In this document: piece after piece, positions 11,834 to 55,500 of the stretch
How the letters are laid out: every line of letters starts with the position of its first letter
Position numbering within the stretch: the stretch's first letter is position 1
Assembly: GCF_001194135.2 (NCBI RefSeq)
Contig: NC_068981.1
Coordinates: 20,488,989-20,552,988, forward strand
Origin: Octopus bimaculoides
Taxonomy: Eukaryota
Length of the DNA stretch: 64,000 nucleotides
Direction of reading: 5' to 3'
Made by a program: the position numbers and the translations under genes
Notes under the pieces: model-generated
Seen by the model: the letters and a program-made list of their open reading frames with translations, nothing else
Told to the model about the DNA's origin: nothing
Database searches by the model: none

Positions 11834-12456
11834 ATACCATTAATAGAAGCCATTTTGATCATTCTCCCAAAGAACAGATAAATTTTAACAAAAATATCAC
11901 AGAACTCAAACCTTTAATGAAAAGACAGAAACGCCATGGTGAAACATTATTTCCTTTACCACCTAGATTGGTTTTGCTGGCAGTGGTCTATCTCAAACAG
12001 GTTTTCCATCAAATCAATATTAGTGCTTATCATAGTGTAACCCTGTCTTGTGATAATGTTATATCCAGAGCTATCTATGATGAATTCCCAATGGCCATCC
12101 TGTTCTGGGAATTTAATGACCAACCTTTTAATATTGATCCATCTTCCATGCTTTATAAATCCATATCTAATGAATTGGTCCTCATCTCAGCACAACCAAA
12201 GAACAGTGGTGTTTATACATGTCAAATGACACAGAATTTCCAGTGGGTTCAAGTGGTGGATGTGTTTGTCCTACAGGTATATTCAGAAGAAGTAAAAACA
12301 TATTACAAAGAGAAAACCAAACTGCGTTTGAGCTGCCATGGTGAGGCACTAATGGAAATATTTCCTGGTGTGAAAAGGATATGGTATCGTAATAATACTG
12401 CGGTATATATTAATGATAATGTTCAATCAGATGTTGTTGATATCCCTTCAGAAAAG
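11834..12456 (+). CDS. Gene A exon: Ig domain 1 and most of Ig domain 2 of a type I membrane protein
   Basis: Acceptor TGTTTTCAG|11834 (phase 1), open to donor AAG|GTGAGA (phase 0). Ig motifs VTLSC...LFWEFN...NSGVYTC and LRLSC...RIWYRN. RQKR furin-like site. Confidence 0.88.
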
Positions 12457-12689
12457 GTGAGATACTAATTTTTAATAGGGTTTAACCTCATAGCCTCATA
12501 GCAAATAACCACCACTGTCATCAGTGATTTCATCATCATCCTAATCATTATCATTTTCTTGATCATCATCACTAACATCTTCAGGTATGCATTTCTGTGT
12601 ATTATATTTGTGTCTATTTTATGTTAACAAGTGTATGCATGTAAGGGCACCTGTGTATGTAAGTGCATGTGTATGCATGTGAAGTGCAC

Positions 12690-12780
<91 letters not shown>

Positions 12781-12866
12781 CTTGTGTATGTGTCTGTGTA
12801 GATGGAATTGTTGCTTCCTCACAATGCTCTTCTTACCATTAATATAGTTTGTACTTCATGTTTCAG

Positions 12867-13085
12867 TTACATGACTATGATCAATGGCAATGTTGTATTG
12901 TTCAAGGTCACAGACACTGGATTACAGCAAACTATACACTTTTATTGATGCCATCCATCCCATTTACAATGTCTACAGTCTCCCTAGTAGCTCTACTACT
13001 CTCGTCTGCCATTCTAGTGGCTTTCATCACTTTAACTGTCTGCTTCAGTGTTCGCAAGAGAAAAAAAACTGAAATAAAAGATTGA
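12867..13085 (+). CDS. Gene A terminal exon: end of Ig2, transmembrane helix, short basic tail
   Basis: Acceptor TTTCAG|TTA (phase 0) matches the upstream donor. DYDQWQC supplies the second Ig Cys. TM VSLVALLLSSAILVAFITLTVCFSV, then RKRKK and stop. Confidence 0.88.
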   Translation, partial: LHDYDQWQCCIVQGHRHWITANYTLLLMPSIPFTMSTVSLVALLLSSAILVAFITLTVCFSVRKRKKTEIKD

Positions 13086-13589
13086 AGTATTTGAAGAATT
13101 GGATGTCTTACTGATGGCTTTTGTTCCTGATAATAGTTGATTCAAATTTTAGGCAGATGAGGGAGACACGTGCACACATTCACACACACACACACACACA
13201 CATACACGCATTCACGCACACATACACACACTTCCATGGTTGTTATACTAATGGCAGGATTGAATCATTTCTTGACTCTTCTAGTGAGCCATAGTAAAAC
13301 TATATTGCATTGATTGGCACCACATCTTGCTCCCATTACTGTAGTAACTGAACCCAGTCATTTCTCAAAAATTCTATCTATATTGCCAGAGCAATAAGGA
13401 AGCAGTTGTAATTGGTAAAGAGGCAGATTGTTTATTTCCATAGTTGAATGCTACACTTTTTTGTGTTCAAACTCTGCTAAAACTTTGTTTTATTCTTTTT
13501 TTTTTGTTTCTTTGTTTTGTCTTTTTTGTTTTAGTTTTGTCAATTTTGTGTTTGTTGGAGGGTACAGGTAAAAGTAAGAGTCAAGTCAT

Positions 13590-13817
13590 ATAGACTTTTA
13601 AGGGTTGGTTTTCTGGTTTCATGGTGTATATATTCCCCACCTGGACAGGACGCTGGTCTGTCACAGAATTACTCATTATTGCCAGCTGAAGGGACTGGAG
13701 CAATGTGAAAAGAAGTGTTTGCTCAAAAACACAACATGGCACCTGGTACAGGAATCGAAACCAAAATCTTACAATCATGAGTCTAACACCCTGACCACTA
13801 AGCCACATGCCTCCACA
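13590..13817 (-). mobile_element. Decayed tRNA-derived SINE
   Basis: Minus-strand head GGCATGTGGCTTAGTGGTCAGGGTGTTAGACTCATG with B-box TTCGATTCC. Resembles the family D head. Confidence 0.6.
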
Positions 13818-15017
13818 GCAGGGTGCAGGTGGGTCAACAGTTACCAGTTATATATTGTAGTGATATCAGTTGTGCATAGTCAAAAGAACAGTTAGACCAA
13901 ACATGACAAGCTCACTACACTGGAACTCCACTTTAGGCAAAACTGATTGAAGTAACTGAACTTTCCCCTGAGAAAAGAACAGCCATGTATGGTAGTGCTT
14001 GCATTTGGAAACTCATATTTATGAGGCTGCATACAGTGATTCAGGCTGCTCCAAACAGCAGTCAAATCTCCCTCTAATTTCCCCCTACCGTTTTAATAAA
14101 GATATGTTGGATAATATAGTTCTAATCAAAGCATGACTGAAAAAAAGAAGGATGGACATGGTTAGAACATCTTTGATCATAGGTCTACTACAACCACAAG
14201 AAGAATAACAACAACTCTCTACACCCAAATATATTTTAATATACAATGTCATAAAATAATTTTCACACATATATTATTATTATGAAGCCAAAGATACACC
14301 TTAAGGAAATATTTGGATACACTACCAAGTCCCATAATCACTTGATGAGTTAACTCTCTTTTCAAACATACTCTAGTATCTTGTCACAAACACTGAGTAC
14401 AGAATAGTAAATCTTGTCTATTCTCCTGAAAATATCTAAGTACAGCCAATTCAGTTTTGGCTCTGTTTTTGTTTAACTGAAGTGAAATGCTTGCAAAAGA
14501 GACATACATCTATTACAACTCTTTGGTATATTTCCCTGACAATTAACTTTAATATATATTGAAAACATTCTTATATCAAAGATTCTCATTCATATTTATC
14601 TTTCAAGAATAGAACCAGTGTGAAATTTTGTAAGATTGCAAGCCTTAACTAACATATATAAATTCTTGATTCCAAACCTGAAAGATTTTCTTTTAAGGAT
14701 ATTTCAAAAGGATATTTCAAAGATAACAGTAGTAAGATATTAAGATAAATTAATATCACAAAGCTTTATTTAATTCATTTTCTCAAATGCATAATAAAAA
14801 AAAATGAAAAATAAAAGTAACTGTTTACATCAAAATGCATTTTATTTTTTTTATTTTAATCTTGAAGCGAAAATAGTTTTTAAATCATTACAAAATTTAC
14901 TCTATACATTTAATTAACAAAAAATAGTTATGAAGTGAAATTTTCAGTGGAATAATGTTAAGAGTAAACAATATTTTATTAAGAAAAAAATTTTTAAACA
15001 ATTTCTTTGATTTTTAC

Positions 15018-15070
15018 TTAGAAAAGTTTCTCAAATAGTTCTTCCACATCATCTCCGTTAGGTGTTCCTT
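15018..15070 (-). CDS. Gene B putative terminal exon (EGTPNGDDVEELFEKLF*)
   Basis: Acceptor CCACAG|AA in phase 1 matches the donor of the 22430 exon. Acidic composition. AATAAA signals downstream on the minus strand (about 14975, 14845, 14768). Confidence 0.65.
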
Positions 15071-15219
15071 CTGTGGTTTGTAATTTCAATGAAAAGATAA
15101 AATGTGAAAGTAATATATATATACACATAGTTAAATTTATAAAGATTAAGTATAGCATATGAATATACTGATGTCTTTCAATAATCAGTACCAAATTAAG
15201 AAAATGCAGTCATACCATA

Positions 15220-15427
15220 CAGGGTGTCCACAAAGTCTGGGTACATGGGATTAACACATACTTTAAGAAATTATTATTTCTTATATTCAATTGTTTATGT
15301 TATGATTTTATTTGCTCTCTGTACCCACATGGGGATTAACACATACTTTAAGAAATTATTTCTTATATTTAATTGATTATGTCATAATTTTATTTACTCC
15401 ATGTACCCAGACTTTGTGGACACCCTG
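15220..15427. mobile_element. Tc1/mariner-type MITE with duplicated internal core
   Basis: TIRs CAGGGTGTCCACAAAGTCTGGGTACATGG and its reverse complement. TA on both sides. An internal unit of about 82 bp is present twice. Confidence 0.9.
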
Positions 15428-53831: not shown

Positions 53832-53864
<33 letters not shown>

Positions 53865-53893
53865 CAGAGAGAGAGAGAGAGAGGGGGGGATAC

Positions 53894-53925
<32 letters not shown>

Positions 53926-54783
53926 ATACATAGACTATTGAAAGTCAGGAGGTATGAGAGGTGAATATATTTAACTACTTGATATTCATAAGATTACAGC
54001 TGTTTCACAGCTTTTATCATAATAATAATAATAATAATTTCAGTATGCATGCTTATATATACATATATATACATATGCAAATGCCATACGTGCATACATA
54101 CAAACATATATACATACATACATATATGTACATATAAATATATATAAAACAGATGTTAAACAATGATGATATATATCATCATCATCATTTAACATCCGTT
54201 ATCCATGCTGACAAGCTGGAAGGCTGCACCAATTCCAGTCTGATATATATGTATGTATGTATGTGTATATATATATATATATATACATATATATNNNNNN
54301 NNNNNNNNNNNNNNNNNNNNNNNNNNNNNNNNNNNNNNNNNNNNNNNNNNNNNNNNNNNNNNNNNNNNNNNNNNNNNNNNNNNNNNNNNNNNNNNNNNNN
54401 NNNNNNNNNNNNNNNNNNNNNNNNNNNNNNNNNNNNNNNNNNNNNNNNNNNNNNNNNNNNNNNNNNNNNNNNNNNNNNNNNNNNNNNNNNNNNNNNNNNN
54501 NNNNNNNNNNNNNNNNNNNNNNNNNNNNNNNNNNNNNNNNNNNNNNNNNNNNNNNNNNNNNNNNNNNNNNNNNNNNNNNNNNNNNNNNNNNNNNNNNNNN
54601 NNNNNNNNNNNNNNNNNNNNNNNNNNNNNNCATGTATGTGTACGTACACACACAAATATATATAAATATTGATTTATCCAATGTTGATTGCTTCCATTAT
54701 GGTTGCATATTGTGATGCACTACATCTACCAATAGTATGATGGATCTCTGAACCCCCAGAAACAGCTGTTGGACTTATAATAC

Positions 54784-54822
54784 CTGATTTCTCTGGCGTT
54801 TAATTTTTTTGTCACTTGTACT
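54784..54822 (-). CDS. Gene D exon 2 (STSDKKIKRQRNQ)
   Basis: Acceptor TTATACAG, donor CAG|GTATTA, phase 0/0, matching exon 1. Confidence 0.6.
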
Positions 54823-55085
54823 CTGTATAAGTTGGATCTATTAATATAAATATTTATATATTTATACTCAAATATTCATCGTCTGGAAGTCTCCACCTTT
54901 TGCTTTCTCTAATTTGTCATGTATGTATATATACATATTTTGTATTCCATACCCAAACTGTTATATTTATATCTAATTTGTATATCTGCATAATTGCCTC
55001 TATATAAACATATACATACACACATACATACGCATATACATACACACATATACATGTATATGTATACATACACACATATACATAC

Positions 55086-55120
<35 letters not shown>

Positions 55121-55246
55121 NNNNNNNNNNNNNNNNNNNNNNNNNNNNNNNNNNNNNNNNNNNNNNNNNNNNNNNNNNNNNNNNNNNNNNNNNNNNNNNN
55201 NNNNNNNNNNNNNNNNNNNNNNNNNNNNNNNNNNNNNNNNNNNNNN

Positions 55247-55307
<61 letters not shown>

Positions 55308-55413
55308 CATGTAGGATTTGTATATAATACAGATCATGATAATGCACAACAGTAATTTAAATCATCAACATTTAGCAATATTAAAAGATACAGCTGAAAG
55401 TCACTTCACTCAC

Positions 55414-55500
55414 CTCGGTCACTGGGGCTGCAGTGATCAAACTGGTCAGAATGGTCAGAAGTAGAACCATTAACAATCTTTGTCCATTTTGGCAAGCCAT
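55414..55500 (-). CDS. Gene D first coding exon: signal peptide (MACQNGQRLLMVLLLTILTSLITA-APVTE)
   Basis: AAAATGG start context, n/h/c signal architecture, consensus donor GAG|GTGAGT (phase 0). Confidence 0.8.

What the first reader, a model, noticed from the sequence alone, without database searches (positions are those of the whole stretch)
11834..55500. Possible cluster of five orphan extracellular/membrane genes hidden among repeats
Hand assembly of phase-compatible exons gives five genes within about 44 kb. A is an Ig-Ig-TM protein, B an acidic glyco-repeat protein, C a small protein with a hydrophobic N-terminus, D a signal-peptide precursor and E a Cys-containing protein. None resembles a family I recognise beyond the Ig fold. 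A and B converge with stops about 1.9 kb apart; E and D also converge. Clusters of lineage-specific genes are known in coleoid genomes. That these form a co-expressed tissue system (gamete surface, gland or skin) is inference.
Basis: partly seen in the sequence, partly recalled or inferred. Interest (0 to 1): 0.7.

Follow-up and report, generated by a model that had tools for sequence, protein, structure and literature searches.

The report
Two octopus orphan genes, not five
The supposed cluster of five hidden genes is really two already-annotated, uncharacterised Octopus genes lying tail to tail: a small antibody-fold membrane protein, and one 40-kb gene for a fast-evolving, sugar-coated secreted repeat protein whose scattered exons were read as several genes.

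Summary
The window is Octopus bimaculoides chromosome CM046601.1, about 20,488,989-20,552,988.

**Gene A is real.** It is LOC106882169 isoform X1, an Ig-Ig-TM protein of 324 aa. Its exons are 11834-12456 and 12867-13085 (+). Its signal-peptide exon lies 4.1 kb before the window. That exon is shared with a paralogous Ig-Ig-TM cassette.

**Gene B is real.** It is LOC106882335, a secreted acidic protein (pI 4.2) with 29 N-glycosylation sequons and 32-aa tandem repeats. It has nine GT-AG, in-frame exons on the minus strand, from 55500 to 15018.

**The signal-peptide exon at 55500 belongs to B.** The O. sinensis orthologue (LOC115218089, 625 aa) has the same nine exons.

**C and E have no support.**
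- No other gene is annotated across 76.6 kb of the O. sinensis locus.
- Every non-B ORF of at least 100 codons is broken in O. sinensis.
- Short ORFs survive at the neutral rate.
- Only transposon remnants match Pfam.

**The assembly gaps do not break either gene.** Four gaps lie in B's introns. The fifth, 23174-23183, sits inside B's repeat array between near-identical flanks and leaves only the repeat count uncertain.

**Rates of change.** The convergent A/B arrangement (stops 1,932 bp apart) is conserved in three Octopus species. B evolves about six times faster than A (dN/dS 1.29 against 0.55).

Function and co-expression remain untested.

The parts
11834..12456 (+). Gene A (LOC106882169 isoform X1), exon 2. 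It encodes an N-terminal linker with an RQKR dibasic site, Ig domain 1 (Cys117...NSGVYTC174), and most of Ig domain 2.
   Evidence: AG acceptor before 11834 and GTGAGA donor after 12456. Pfam Ig_2 scores 29.5 bits against a cut-off of 27, and ig scores 23.9 against 21.8. The sequence is 100% identical to P0001.
12867..13085 (+). Gene A, last exon. It encodes the end of Ig domain 2 (DYDQWQCC), the transmembrane helix, the 10-residue basic tail RKRKKTEIKD, and the TGA stop at 13083-13085.
   Evidence: TTTCAG acceptor, and the spliced CDS of 759 nt is in frame. Kyte-Doolittle hydropathy peaks at 2.6 in the 19-residue windows starting at residues 290 and 292 of the 324-aa protein.
55414..55500 (-). 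Gene B (LOC106882335), exon 1. The ATG is at 55500 and the exon encodes the signal peptide MACQNGQRLLMVLLLTILTSLITAAPVTE.
   Evidence: tblastn of XP_014788475.1; GAG|GTGAGT donor; 27 of 29 residues identical in O. sinensis exon 1.
40200..40224 (-). Gene B, exon 2. A 25-nt mini-exon encoding ESNKTEVA, which carries an N-glycosylation sequon.
   Evidence: Acceptor tttcag and donor G|GTTGGT. It keeps the frame between exons 1 and 3. The same mini-exon is present in O. sinensis at L004 31622-31646.
38176..38268 (-). Gene B, exon 3 (predicted helical).
   Evidence: GT-AG and phase 1; orthologous exon at L004 35214-35306.
36352..36429 (-). Gene B, exon 4.
   Evidence: GT-AG and phase 1; orthologous exon at L004 37040-37138.
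30746..30799 (-). Gene B, exon 5. It carries the first conserved Cys. The old UniProt model A0A0L8I7T9 starts here at MAEDH.
28025..28162 (-). Gene B, exon 6. This is the best-conserved part (EYENATLAELCQKFSGGTISYKVKANVDCILSSLF...) and carries two conserved Cys.
   Evidence: The per-exon estimate of pN/pS is 0.49.
27128..27250 (-). Gene B, exon 7. It carries the fourth conserved Cys.
22430..23743 (-). Gene B, exon 8. It encodes an acidic, predicted helical segment and then a tandem array of 96-bp (32-aa) units, NATLPAGPSVANLTESNVVNAEEPNLGVVEES. Each unit has two N-glycosylation sequons. A conserved C-terminal segment follows.
   Evidence: ORF and TRF period 96 with 92% matches; unit listing; acceptor and donor.
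23174..23183 (.). 10-N assembly gap inside B's repeat array. It is frame-neutral and leaves the repeat count uncertain.
   Evidence: The 206-nt flanks are 201/206 identical, and both start with the array-initial motif. NATLP anchors are spaced 120 nt apart across the gap instead of 96. RefSeq X1 (582 aa) is 72 aa shorter than the 654-aa window model. By reading the two sequences, those residues are the stretch across the gap.
15018..15070 (-). Gene B, last exon (EGTPNGDDVEELFEKLF plus a TAA stop).
   Evidence: The C-terminal ...E-[IL]-F-x-KLF motif is conserved in O. sinensis.
13086..15017 (.). The 1,932-bp interval between the convergent stop codons of A and B. It presumably holds both 3' UTRs.
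   Evidence: The interval is collinear with O. sinensis and O. vulgaris at about 90% identity.
33971..34559 (-). Degenerate pogo/Tigger-type transposase remnant in B's intron 4.
   Evidence: Pfam DDE_1 at E = 2.5e-23 and E = 1e-6.
50767..51267 (-). Degenerate mariner transposase remnant in B's intron 1. The insertion is shared with O. sinensis.
   Evidence: Pfam Transposase_1 at E = 3.5e-15. It sits at the orthologous position at 87% identity, and the O. sinensis copy has 5 stop codons.
19374..20133 (-). LINE-like fragment in B's last intron (a CADD reverse-transcriptase-type motif and a Cys-rich tail). It spans the 10-N gap at 19650-19659.
   Evidence: ORFs seen, with a related copy at 32700-33029 (+). 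No Pfam hit, so the LINE label is an inference from motifs.

Best explanation
**What the interval holds.** 11834-55500 contains two convergently transcribed, Octopus-restricted protein-coding genes and no others.

**Gene A (plus strand).** Its two exons in the window encode a type I membrane glycoprotein:
- two Ig domains;
- one transmembrane helix;
- a 10-residue basic cytoplasmic tail.

The signal peptide comes from a leader exon 15.8 kb upstream of exon 2, outside the window. In the annotation that leader is alternatively spliced to a neighbouring paralogous Ig-Ig-TM cassette. Inferred function: a cell-surface recognition or adhesion subunit that signals through a partner, because the tail is too short to signal alone.

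**Gene B (minus strand).** Nine exons spread over 40.5 kb, with coding sequence about 5% of the span, encode a secreted protein made of:
- a signal peptide;
- a helical N-terminal half with four conserved cysteines;
- an acidic helical segment;
- a disordered array of 32-residue repeats, each with two N-glycosylation sites;
- a short conserved C-terminus.

Inferred function: a heavily N-glycosylated, polyanionic extracellular coat, mucus or matrix protein. Its sequence diverges at about the neutral rate while its reading frame, cysteines and sequons are kept. That pattern is typical of reproductive, secretory-gland or host-defence proteins.

**Shown versus inferred.** The gene structures, the orthology and the evolutionary rates are shown here. 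The cellular roles are inferred.
For: **Identity of the window and of the two genes**
- The window is 100% identical to GCA_001194135.2 CM046601.1.
- The model of A is 100% identical to XP_052821562.1.
- B's exons match XP_014788475.1 and XP_014788468.1.

**Structure of B**
- All nine exons are GT-AG. They give one open 654-codon frame running from the ATG at 55500 to the TAA at 15018.
- The O. sinensis orthologue XP_029643736.1 aligns from residue 1.
- That orthologue has the same nine exons across 56.6 kb.

**Synteny and annotation in other species**
- The O. sinensis locus (76.6 kb) and the O. vulgaris locus each show only the A orthologue and a convergent 625-aa or 644-aa gene starting about 1.9 kb beyond A's stop.

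**Protein features**
- A matches Pfam Ig_2 and ig above their cut-offs. Its best solved-structure relatives are CEA, contactin-2 and PECAM. It has a clear transmembrane hydropathy peak.
- B has pI 4.2, 29 sequons, 5 Cys and no transmembrane segment beyond the signal peptide. The AF2 secondary structure is helical to about residue 290 and then coil, at low confidence.

**Evolutionary rates (O. bimaculoides against O. sinensis)**
- A: dN 0.028, dS 0.051, omega 0.55.
- B, non-repeat part: dN 0.171, dS 0.133, omega 1.29 over 380 codons.
- With the measured intron rates (5.5 frameshifting indels per kb; 5.2% of substitutions create a stop), a neutral 1,140-nt frame at B's divergence would stay open with probability of order 1e-7 (my arithmetic).

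**Tests for further genes**
- Of 79 alignable ORFs of at least 60 codons, 10 are intact in O. sinensis. The neutral expectation is 11-19%.
- All non-B ORFs of at least 100 codons are broken in O. sinensis.
- No Pfam domain was found in intronic ORFs other than transposases.
Against: **Limits on the gene models**
- No transcript data could be examined, so every junction rests on gene models, splice consensus, frame and orthology.
- B does not appear among the genes called on the current O. bimaculoides assembly in the collection. Only the older RefSeq and UniProt models carry it.
- The UniProt model starts at exon 5 without a signal peptide.

**Limits on the tests for C and E**
- The O. sinensis comparison has limited power. 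Introns are already 89% identical.
- B itself shows no codon-level constraint, so a similarly fast-evolving small gene made of short exons in an intron could escape these tests.

**Limits on function**
- The functional statements have no direct support. Both AF2 models are poor (pLDDT 39 and 36).
- B has no family or solved-structure match.
- An omega of 1.29 is not distinguishable from 1 (chi-square about 1.25, my arithmetic).
Confidence: 0.75

Rival explanations
1. One reading: five separate small orphan genes (A to E) lie in 44 kb. D is an independent signal-peptide precursor, and C and E are independent small proteins.
For: - Phase-compatible short exons can be assembled by hand.
- Some short ORFs on the plus strand of B's introns are open in both species. 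Examples are the Cys-containing ORFs 36000-36209, 37287-37532 and 42460-42702.
- The hydrophobic ORF 39733-40155 (-) could pass for C.
Against: - The signal exon joins B's other exons in frame in three gene models from two species.
- Without that exon, B would have no signal peptide despite 29 sequons.
- No extra gene is annotated in the 76.6-kb O. sinensis locus.
- Short ORFs survive at the neutral rate.
- ORF 39733-40155 has three frameshifts in O. sinensis and is a low-complexity tract.
- No Pfam hits.
Confidence: 0.05
2. B is two transcription units. The 5' unit (exons 1-4, 55500 to about 36350) encodes a short secreted helical peptide precursor. The 3' unit starts at exon 5 (MAEDH..., as in UniProt A0A0L8I7T9) and carries the repeats.
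For: - The 2015 UniProt model starts at exon 5.
- Intron 4 is 5.5 kb long and exon 5 is poorly conserved, with a different boundary in O. sinensis.
- Reading through the exon 4 donor meets a stop within about 12 codons (read from the sequence shown).
Against: - A repeat protein starting at MAEDH would lack a signal peptide, although it has conserved Cys and N-glycosylation sequons.
- The RefSeq models in O. bimaculoides (X1 and X2) and in O. sinensis all join exons 4 and 5, with matching phase 1 and GT-AG sites.
Confidence: 0.1
3. B is a decaying or non-functional locus evolving neutrally, kept in annotations only because of its long repeat ORF.
For: - Omega is about 1.3 and not different from 1.
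- The gene is missing from the genes called on the current O. bimaculoides assembly.
- No homologues outside Octopus.
Against: - Nine exons, all splice sites, the start, the stop and the frame are intact in two species. A convergent 644-aa gene is annotated at the same position in O. vulgaris.
- The neutral expectation for an open frame is of order 1e-7 (my arithmetic).
- Four Cys, exon 6 and the C-terminal motif are conserved.
Confidence: 0.05

Closest known systems
Octopus sinensis LOC118764145 (XP_036360313.1) and the O. vulgaris protein CAI9715875.1: orthologues of A
   Same: - 93% amino-acid identity.
- Same exon structure and same acceptor sequence.
- Same shared leader exon plus a 314-aa paralogous cassette in O. 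sinensis.
- Same convergent neighbour.
   Different: - The orthologues carry three extra C-terminal residues (RSI).
- The O. vulgaris model lacks the leader exon: it is 281 aa and starts at MNRSHF.
Octopus sinensis LOC115218089 (XP_029643736.1): orthologue of B
   Same: - Nine exons in the same order and phases.
- Same signal peptide, four Cys, acidic segment, N-glycosylated repeats and C-terminal motif.
- Same convergent position next to the A orthologue.
   Different: - Only about 70% identity outside the repeats.
- The repeat units differ in sequence, and most are 31 rather than 32 residues long. They are alike within a species and different between species, which points to concerted evolution.
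- Exons 4, 5 and 9 differ in length.
Two-Ig-domain cell-surface IgSF adhesion and recognition proteins (the CEACAM, contactin and PECAM type of Ig domain)
   Same: - C2/I-set-like Ig domains with the Cys...Trp...Y-x-C signature.
- Type I topology and N-glycosylation.
- The best solved-structure hits are CEA (E = 2.7e-6), contactin-2 and PECAM.
   Different: - No orthology to any named IgSF family.
- The cytoplasmic tail is only 10 residues and has no recognised motif.
- The extended N-terminal linker carries an RQKR site.
- The leader exon is shared with a paralogous cassette.
Mucin-like and other tandem-repeat secreted glycoproteins, and rapidly evolving reproductive coat proteins such as abalone VERL and lysin (from general knowledge)
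   Same: - Signal peptide.
- A long, disordered, glycosylated tandem-repeat array homogenised within species.
- Fast divergence between close species while the frame is preserved.
   Different: - The repeats are acidic and rich in N-glycosylation sequons, not Pro/Thr/Ser-rich O-glycosylation repeats.
- No ZP, VWD, CysD or other mucin or egg-coat domain.
- No expression evidence places it in gametes.

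Membership tests
Immunoglobulin superfamily (gene A) | An Ig-domain profile match above the curated threshold | tested here: met
   - Exon-2 ORF: Ig_2 scores 29.5 bits against a cut-off of 27, and ig scores 23.9 against 21.8.
- Full protein: Ig_2 scores 27.8 bits with two matched stretches.
Immunoglobulin superfamily (gene A) | An intradomain Cys pair with a central Trp and the D/N-x-G-x-Y-x-C motif, in each of two domains | tested here: met
   - Read from the sequence: C117...W...NSGVYTC174 and C212...W...DYDQWQCC261/262.
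- The second domain is split by the intron at 12456|12867.
Type I single-pass membrane protein (gene A) | An N-terminal signal peptide plus one C-terminal transmembrane helix followed by basic residues | tested here: met
   - Hydropathy peaks at 2.6 in the 19-residue windows starting at residues 290 and 292, followed by RKRKK.
- The leader exon MAVYFILTYCAVWSIILSETAC is hydrophobic.
- No dedicated signal-peptide predictor was available.
Classical mucins (gene B) | Pro/Thr/Ser-rich O-glycosylated tandem repeats flanked by VWD, CysD or SEA domains | tested here: not met
   - The repeat unit NATLPAGPSVANLTESNVVNAEEPNLGVVEES is acidic and rich in N-glycosylation sequons.
- S+T is 17.7%.
- No Pfam domain at all.
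- B may work like a mucin but is not a member of the family.
Secreted N-glycoprotein (gene B) | A cleavable signal peptide, no membrane anchor, and N-x-S/T sequons | tested here: met
   - The only hydrophobic segment covers roughly residues 6-29.
- 29 sequons.
- The signal exon is conserved in O. sinensis.
- Glycosylation itself cannot be tested here.
Variable-exon clusters sharing constant exons (protocadherin or UGT1A type), considered for the A locus | Many alternative variable exons, each with its own promoter, spliced to common downstream constant exons | tested here: not met
   - The arrangement here is the reverse. One common 5' leader exon (L001 10001-10133) is joined either to a single-exon Ig-Ig-TM body (L001 about 11382-12191) or to A's two exons.
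- Only two cassettes were seen.
- Whether the sharing is real needs transcripts.
   - Only two genes are present.
- No expression data are reachable.
- No paper cites the accessions.

The most novel reading that the evidence does not exclude
A and B are a linked, co-evolving recognition pair: a two-Ig membrane receptor and a rapidly diversifying secreted glycoprotein ligand or coat component. One example would be gamete or mucosal recognition. Under this reading they are held in tail-to-tail linkage in Octopus, B is under positive selection, and receptor variety is generated by choosing between Ig-Ig-TM cassettes behind one shared leader exon.
Probability: 0.05. Interest if true: 0.6.

Novelty: new member of a known kind. 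Interest (0 to 1): 0.22.

Why it matters
The main value is as a correction. A hand-built 'cluster of five orphans' collapses into two genes that public annotations already hold as uncharacterised proteins.

It also shows how cephalopod genes with tiny exons in 40-kb, transposon-filled introns can be over-split by eye.

Three points are modestly useful for cephalopod biology:
- B is an Octopus-restricted secreted glycoprotein. Its protein sequence changes at about the neutral rate while its frame is maintained. That makes it a candidate for reproductive or secretory functions and worth a tissue-expression look.
- The A locus appears to use one leader exon for two divergent Ig-Ig-TM bodies, in both O. 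bimaculoides and O. sinensis.
- The repeat exon of B contains an assembly junction. This probably explains why its RefSeq 'isoforms' differ only in repeat number, and why the gene does not appear among those called on the current assembly.

Tried and rejected
- **AlphaFold2 of A** (single sequence) gave an unusable model, mean pLDDT 39.4.
- **AlphaFold2 of B** (four-row alignment) gave an unusable model, mean pLDDT 35.8. No fold search was run on either model, and only secondary structure was used, with caution.
- **The third word-indexed homology search**, with B's N-terminal 292 residues, returned nothing, not even B itself. I treat that as a failure of candidate selection, not as evidence. 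The index-free HMMER search replaced it.
- **Weak HMMER hits P0009-P0012** match only the N-x-T-rich repeats. The two I read, P0010 and P0012, are unrelated proteins, and I rejected all four as compositional matches.
- **Exact look-ups** of P0003, P0004 and P0005 found no gene on record.
- **P0002**, a Logan protein 86% identical to A, first looked like a transcript with a different leader. Comparing it by eye with the window, it reads through both the acceptor and the donor of exon 2. So it is an ORF call on unspliced genomic DNA of another octopus, not expression evidence.
- **A's leader exon** was searched for inside the window without result.
- **Rfam and tRNA scans** of the window found nothing.
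- **Literature searches** for seven accessions or LOC names found nothing, and one search timed out.
- **Windows of high conservation against O. sinensis** gave no island clearly above the intron background, which averages 0.89 with SD 0.084.

Full report
**Where the window comes from.** The contig that encodes it, CM046601.1 of GCA_001194135.2, is base-for-base identical to the window outside the N runs. Window position 1 corresponds to about 20,488,989 on that chromosome. Composition (about 35% G+C), dense microsatellites and eight N runs fit this assembly.

**Gene A.**
- The exon runs to a GTGAGA donor after 12456. A second exon runs from a TTTCAG acceptor at 12867 to a TGA stop at 13083-13085.
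- The spliced product contains a first Ig domain that passes the Pfam cut-offs for Ig_2 and ig.
- It then has a second Cys...Trp...DYDQWQCC domain split by the intron, a strongly hydrophobic helix, and a 10-residue basic tail.
- The nearest solved structures are Ig domains of CEA, contactin-2 and PECAM, at weak E-values.
- The annotated protein (XP_052821562.1, LOC106882169 isoform X1, 324 aa) has 44 further N-terminal residues. These form a signal peptide encoded by a leader exon 4.1 kb before the window starts. No copy of that leader exists inside the window.
- In the annotation, the same leader is also joined to a single-exon Ig-Ig-TM body of 314 aa that lies just downstream of it. That body is about 23% identical to A.
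- The same two products are annotated in O. sinensis.
- A's orthologues in O. sinensis and O. vulgaris are 93% identical to it. Against O. sinensis, dN is 0.028, dS is 0.051 and omega is 0.55.

So the 'Ig-Ig-TM protein' is confirmed. It is already annotated, and it is restricted to Octopus as far as the search shows.

**Gene B.**
- The 442-codon ORF at 22332-23660 on the minus strand carries 96-bp (32-aa) tandem repeats.
- It matched two O. bimaculoides proteins of LOC106882335.
- Mapping the 518-aa RefSeq isoform back onto the window placed its pieces far apart. The first 29 residues, a textbook signal peptide, map at 55500-55414. That is exactly the right-hand edge of the finding.
- I then fixed every boundary. 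The nine exons are 55500-55414, 40224-40200 (a 25-nt mini-exon), 38268-38176, 36429-36352, 30799-30746, 28162-28025, 27250-27128, 23743-22430 and 15070-15018.
- All exons have AG/GT boundaries and compatible phases, and together they give one open frame of 654 codons ending in TAA.
- The protein has pI 4.2, 29 N-glycosylation sequons, five Cys (one of them in the signal peptide) and no hydrophobic segment after the signal peptide.

**Independent support from other species.**
- An index-free HMMER search of 1.84 billion representative proteins found one real relative, a 625-aa protein that aligns from residue 1. It is XP_029643736.1, LOC115218089 of O. sinensis.
- Its locus (L004, 76.6 kb, no gaps) is collinear with the window from 57.9 kb down to 12 kb.
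- I reproduced its protein exactly from nine GT-AG exons of 87, 25, 93, 99, 57, 141, 123, 1185 and 68 nt. The window has 87, 25, 93, 78, 54, 138, 123, 1314 and 53 nt.
- In that locus only two genes are called: the B orthologue and the convergent A orthologue.
- In O. vulgaris, a 644-aa minus-strand gene likewise begins 1.9 kb beyond the A orthologue's stop. Its repeat exon aligns to the window.

The interval 15018-55500 is a single 40.5-kb gene whose coding sequence is about 5% of its length.

**C and E.**
- *Pfam.* Scans of all ORFs of at least 55 residues and reasonable complexity between 36 and 56 kb found nothing, and scans of selected ORFs elsewhere found only transposases. These were a pogo-type DDE_1 at 33971-34559 and a mariner Transposase_1 at 50767-51267.
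- *Repeats.* A SINE-like element of about 350 bp and other repeats recur through the introns. Even against only about 140 kb of comparison sequence, 12-21% of the span is visibly repeated.
- *ORF survival.* Of 150 ORFs of at least 60 codons between 13.2 and 57.9 kb, 79 fall in blocks alignable to O. sinensis and 10 are intact there. All ten are 62-82 codons long.
- *Neutral expectation.* The measured intron rates are 7.2% mismatches, 5.5 frameshifting indels per kb, and 5.2% of substitutions creating a stop. From these, 11-19% of ORFs of that length should survive by chance. The observed 12.7% is what chance gives.
- *Long ORFs.* Every non-B ORF of at least 100 codons is broken by frameshifts or stops in O. 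sinensis. This includes the hydrophobic low-complexity ORF 39733-40155 (-) and the Cys-containing plus-strand ORFs 45066-45398 and 47219-47596.
- *Conservation.* Sliding-window identity shows no island clearly above the intron background of 0.89, SD 0.084.

This does not exclude a tiny, fast-evolving gene of short exons, but nothing points to one.

**The assembly gaps.**
- 55121-55246 and 54295-54630 lie in B's 15.2-kb first intron, between (CA)n and (TA)n tracts. The O. sinensis sequence at those places is microsatellite too, and both flanks map in order on one contig.
- 17941-18624 and 19650-19659 lie in the last intron. The flanks of the 10-N gap map in consistent order and spacing onto one related element copy in O. 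sinensis. I read that element as LINE-like from its motifs.
- 23174-23183 is the only gap in coding sequence. The sequence before it ends exactly at a unit boundary, and the sequence after it begins at unit position 83.
- The 206 nt on the two sides of this gap are identical at 201 positions. Both start with GGACGGAAGGATCA, the motif that otherwise marks only the start of the array.
- The simplest reading is that the two contig ends overlap. RefSeq isoform X1 (582 aa) is 72 aa shorter than the 654-aa window model. By reading the two sequences, the missing residues are the stretch across the gap.
- The alternative is that 82 nt plus multiples of 96 nt are missing. Either way the frame is preserved and only the number of repeats is uncertain, about 5.7 or at least 8.7 units.
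- RefSeq 'isoforms' X1 and X2 differ only in repeat number. They may be by-products of this junction.

**How B evolves.**
- Outside the repeats, O. bimaculoides and O. sinensis differ at dN 0.171 and dS 0.133 over 380 codons, an omega of 1.29.
- That is six times A's dN, and it is not distinguishable from 1 by my chi-square on those counts.
- Even so, all nine exons, their splice sites, four cysteines, exon 6 and the C-terminal ...KLF motif are kept.
- At B's divergence, a neutral 1,140-nt frame would stay open with probability of order 1e-7 (my arithmetic).
- The repeats are far more alike within a species (92% in TRF) than between species (74-77%), which indicates concerted evolution.
- The low-confidence AF2 model predicts helices up to about residue 290 and coil across the repeats.
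- There is no Pfam or solved-structure match.

**Interpretation.**
- Shown: there are two genes, not five. Both are extracellular or membrane proteins, both are Octopus-restricted in these databases, and they sit in a convergent arrangement conserved in three Octopus species.
- Inferred for A: a surface recognition or adhesion subunit that needs a signalling partner.
- Inferred for B: a secreted, polyanionic, heavily N-glycosylated coat, mucus or matrix protein of a rapidly diversifying class (reproductive, glandular or defensive).
- The conserved linkage among such closely related species is expected by default. It says nothing about a functional tie between A and B.
- Co-expression and tissue are untested. 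No paper mentions any of the accessions.

**Verdict.** Genes A and B, their convergence and the signal-peptide exon are accurate to the base. The interpretation as a five-gene cluster is wrong. Both genes are already in public annotation as uncharacterised proteins. What is new is modest: the rate contrast between A and B, the gap diagnosis, and the shared-leader arrangement.

Noticed in passing
L001 10001-12191 (4.1 to 1.9 kb before window position 1) together with window 11834-13085: One signal-peptide exon is annotated as splicing either to a single-exon Ig-Ig-TM body (314 aa) or, 15.8 kb further on, to gene A's two exons (324 aa). The two bodies are only about 23% identical. The same pair of products is annotated in O. 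sinensis. This arrangement mirrors variable-exon clusters and needs transcript proof.
   Followed up: partly
window 22968-23389: The 206 nt on each side of the 10-N gap in B's repeat exon are 201/206 identical, and both begin with the array-initial motif. This looks like overlapping contig ends. It probably explains RefSeq isoforms that differ only in repeat number.
   Followed up: yes
window 148-928 (-): A Tc1/mariner-type transposase remnant lies in gene A's first intron, outside the finding. It matches HTH_Tnp_Tc3_2 at E = 2.8e-8 and has a weak DDE_3 match.
   Followed up: partly
window 1211-1696 (+) and 59712-60377 (+): Two ORFs of 162 and 222 residues carry Y-I-G...R...H-like motifs reminiscent of GIY-YIG endonuclease modules of Penelope-like elements. 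The second has a long Asn/Ser/Thr-rich tract. Neither matches Pfam, so the label is only a guess.
   Followed up: partly
window 1976-2162, 3794-4075, 7151-7440, 8312-8870, 22029-22242, 32446-32615, 39169-39516, 42079-42431, 51456-51680, 52593-52810: A SINE-like repeat of about 350 bp occurs at least ten times in the window, in both orientations, and also in the O. sinensis and O. vulgaris loci. Its translation contains LQLDALPN[AT]NHSE. A second family occurs at 4553-4958, 5721-6140, 46610-46827, 56588-56936 and 60614-60979. Neither Rfam nor the tRNA scan recognises them.
   Followed up: partly
window 55540-55659 and 56060-56259: Two patches just upstream of B's ATG are 97.5% identical to O. 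sinensis, against an intron mean of 89%. They could be promoter or 5' UTR elements, but they fall within the upper tail of the background distribution.
   Followed up: no
L001 8762-9175 (-), upstream of the window: A retroelement integrase-core fragment (rve, E = 6e-6) lies about 0.8 kb upstream of the A-locus leader exon.
   Followed up: no
window 19374-21600 compared with L004: About 3.7 kb of B's last intron (window 17.9-21.6 kb) has no collinear counterpart in O. sinensis, whose last intron is 10.1 kb against 7.4 kb here. This part of the intron was remodelled by lineage-specific insertions.
   Followed up: partly
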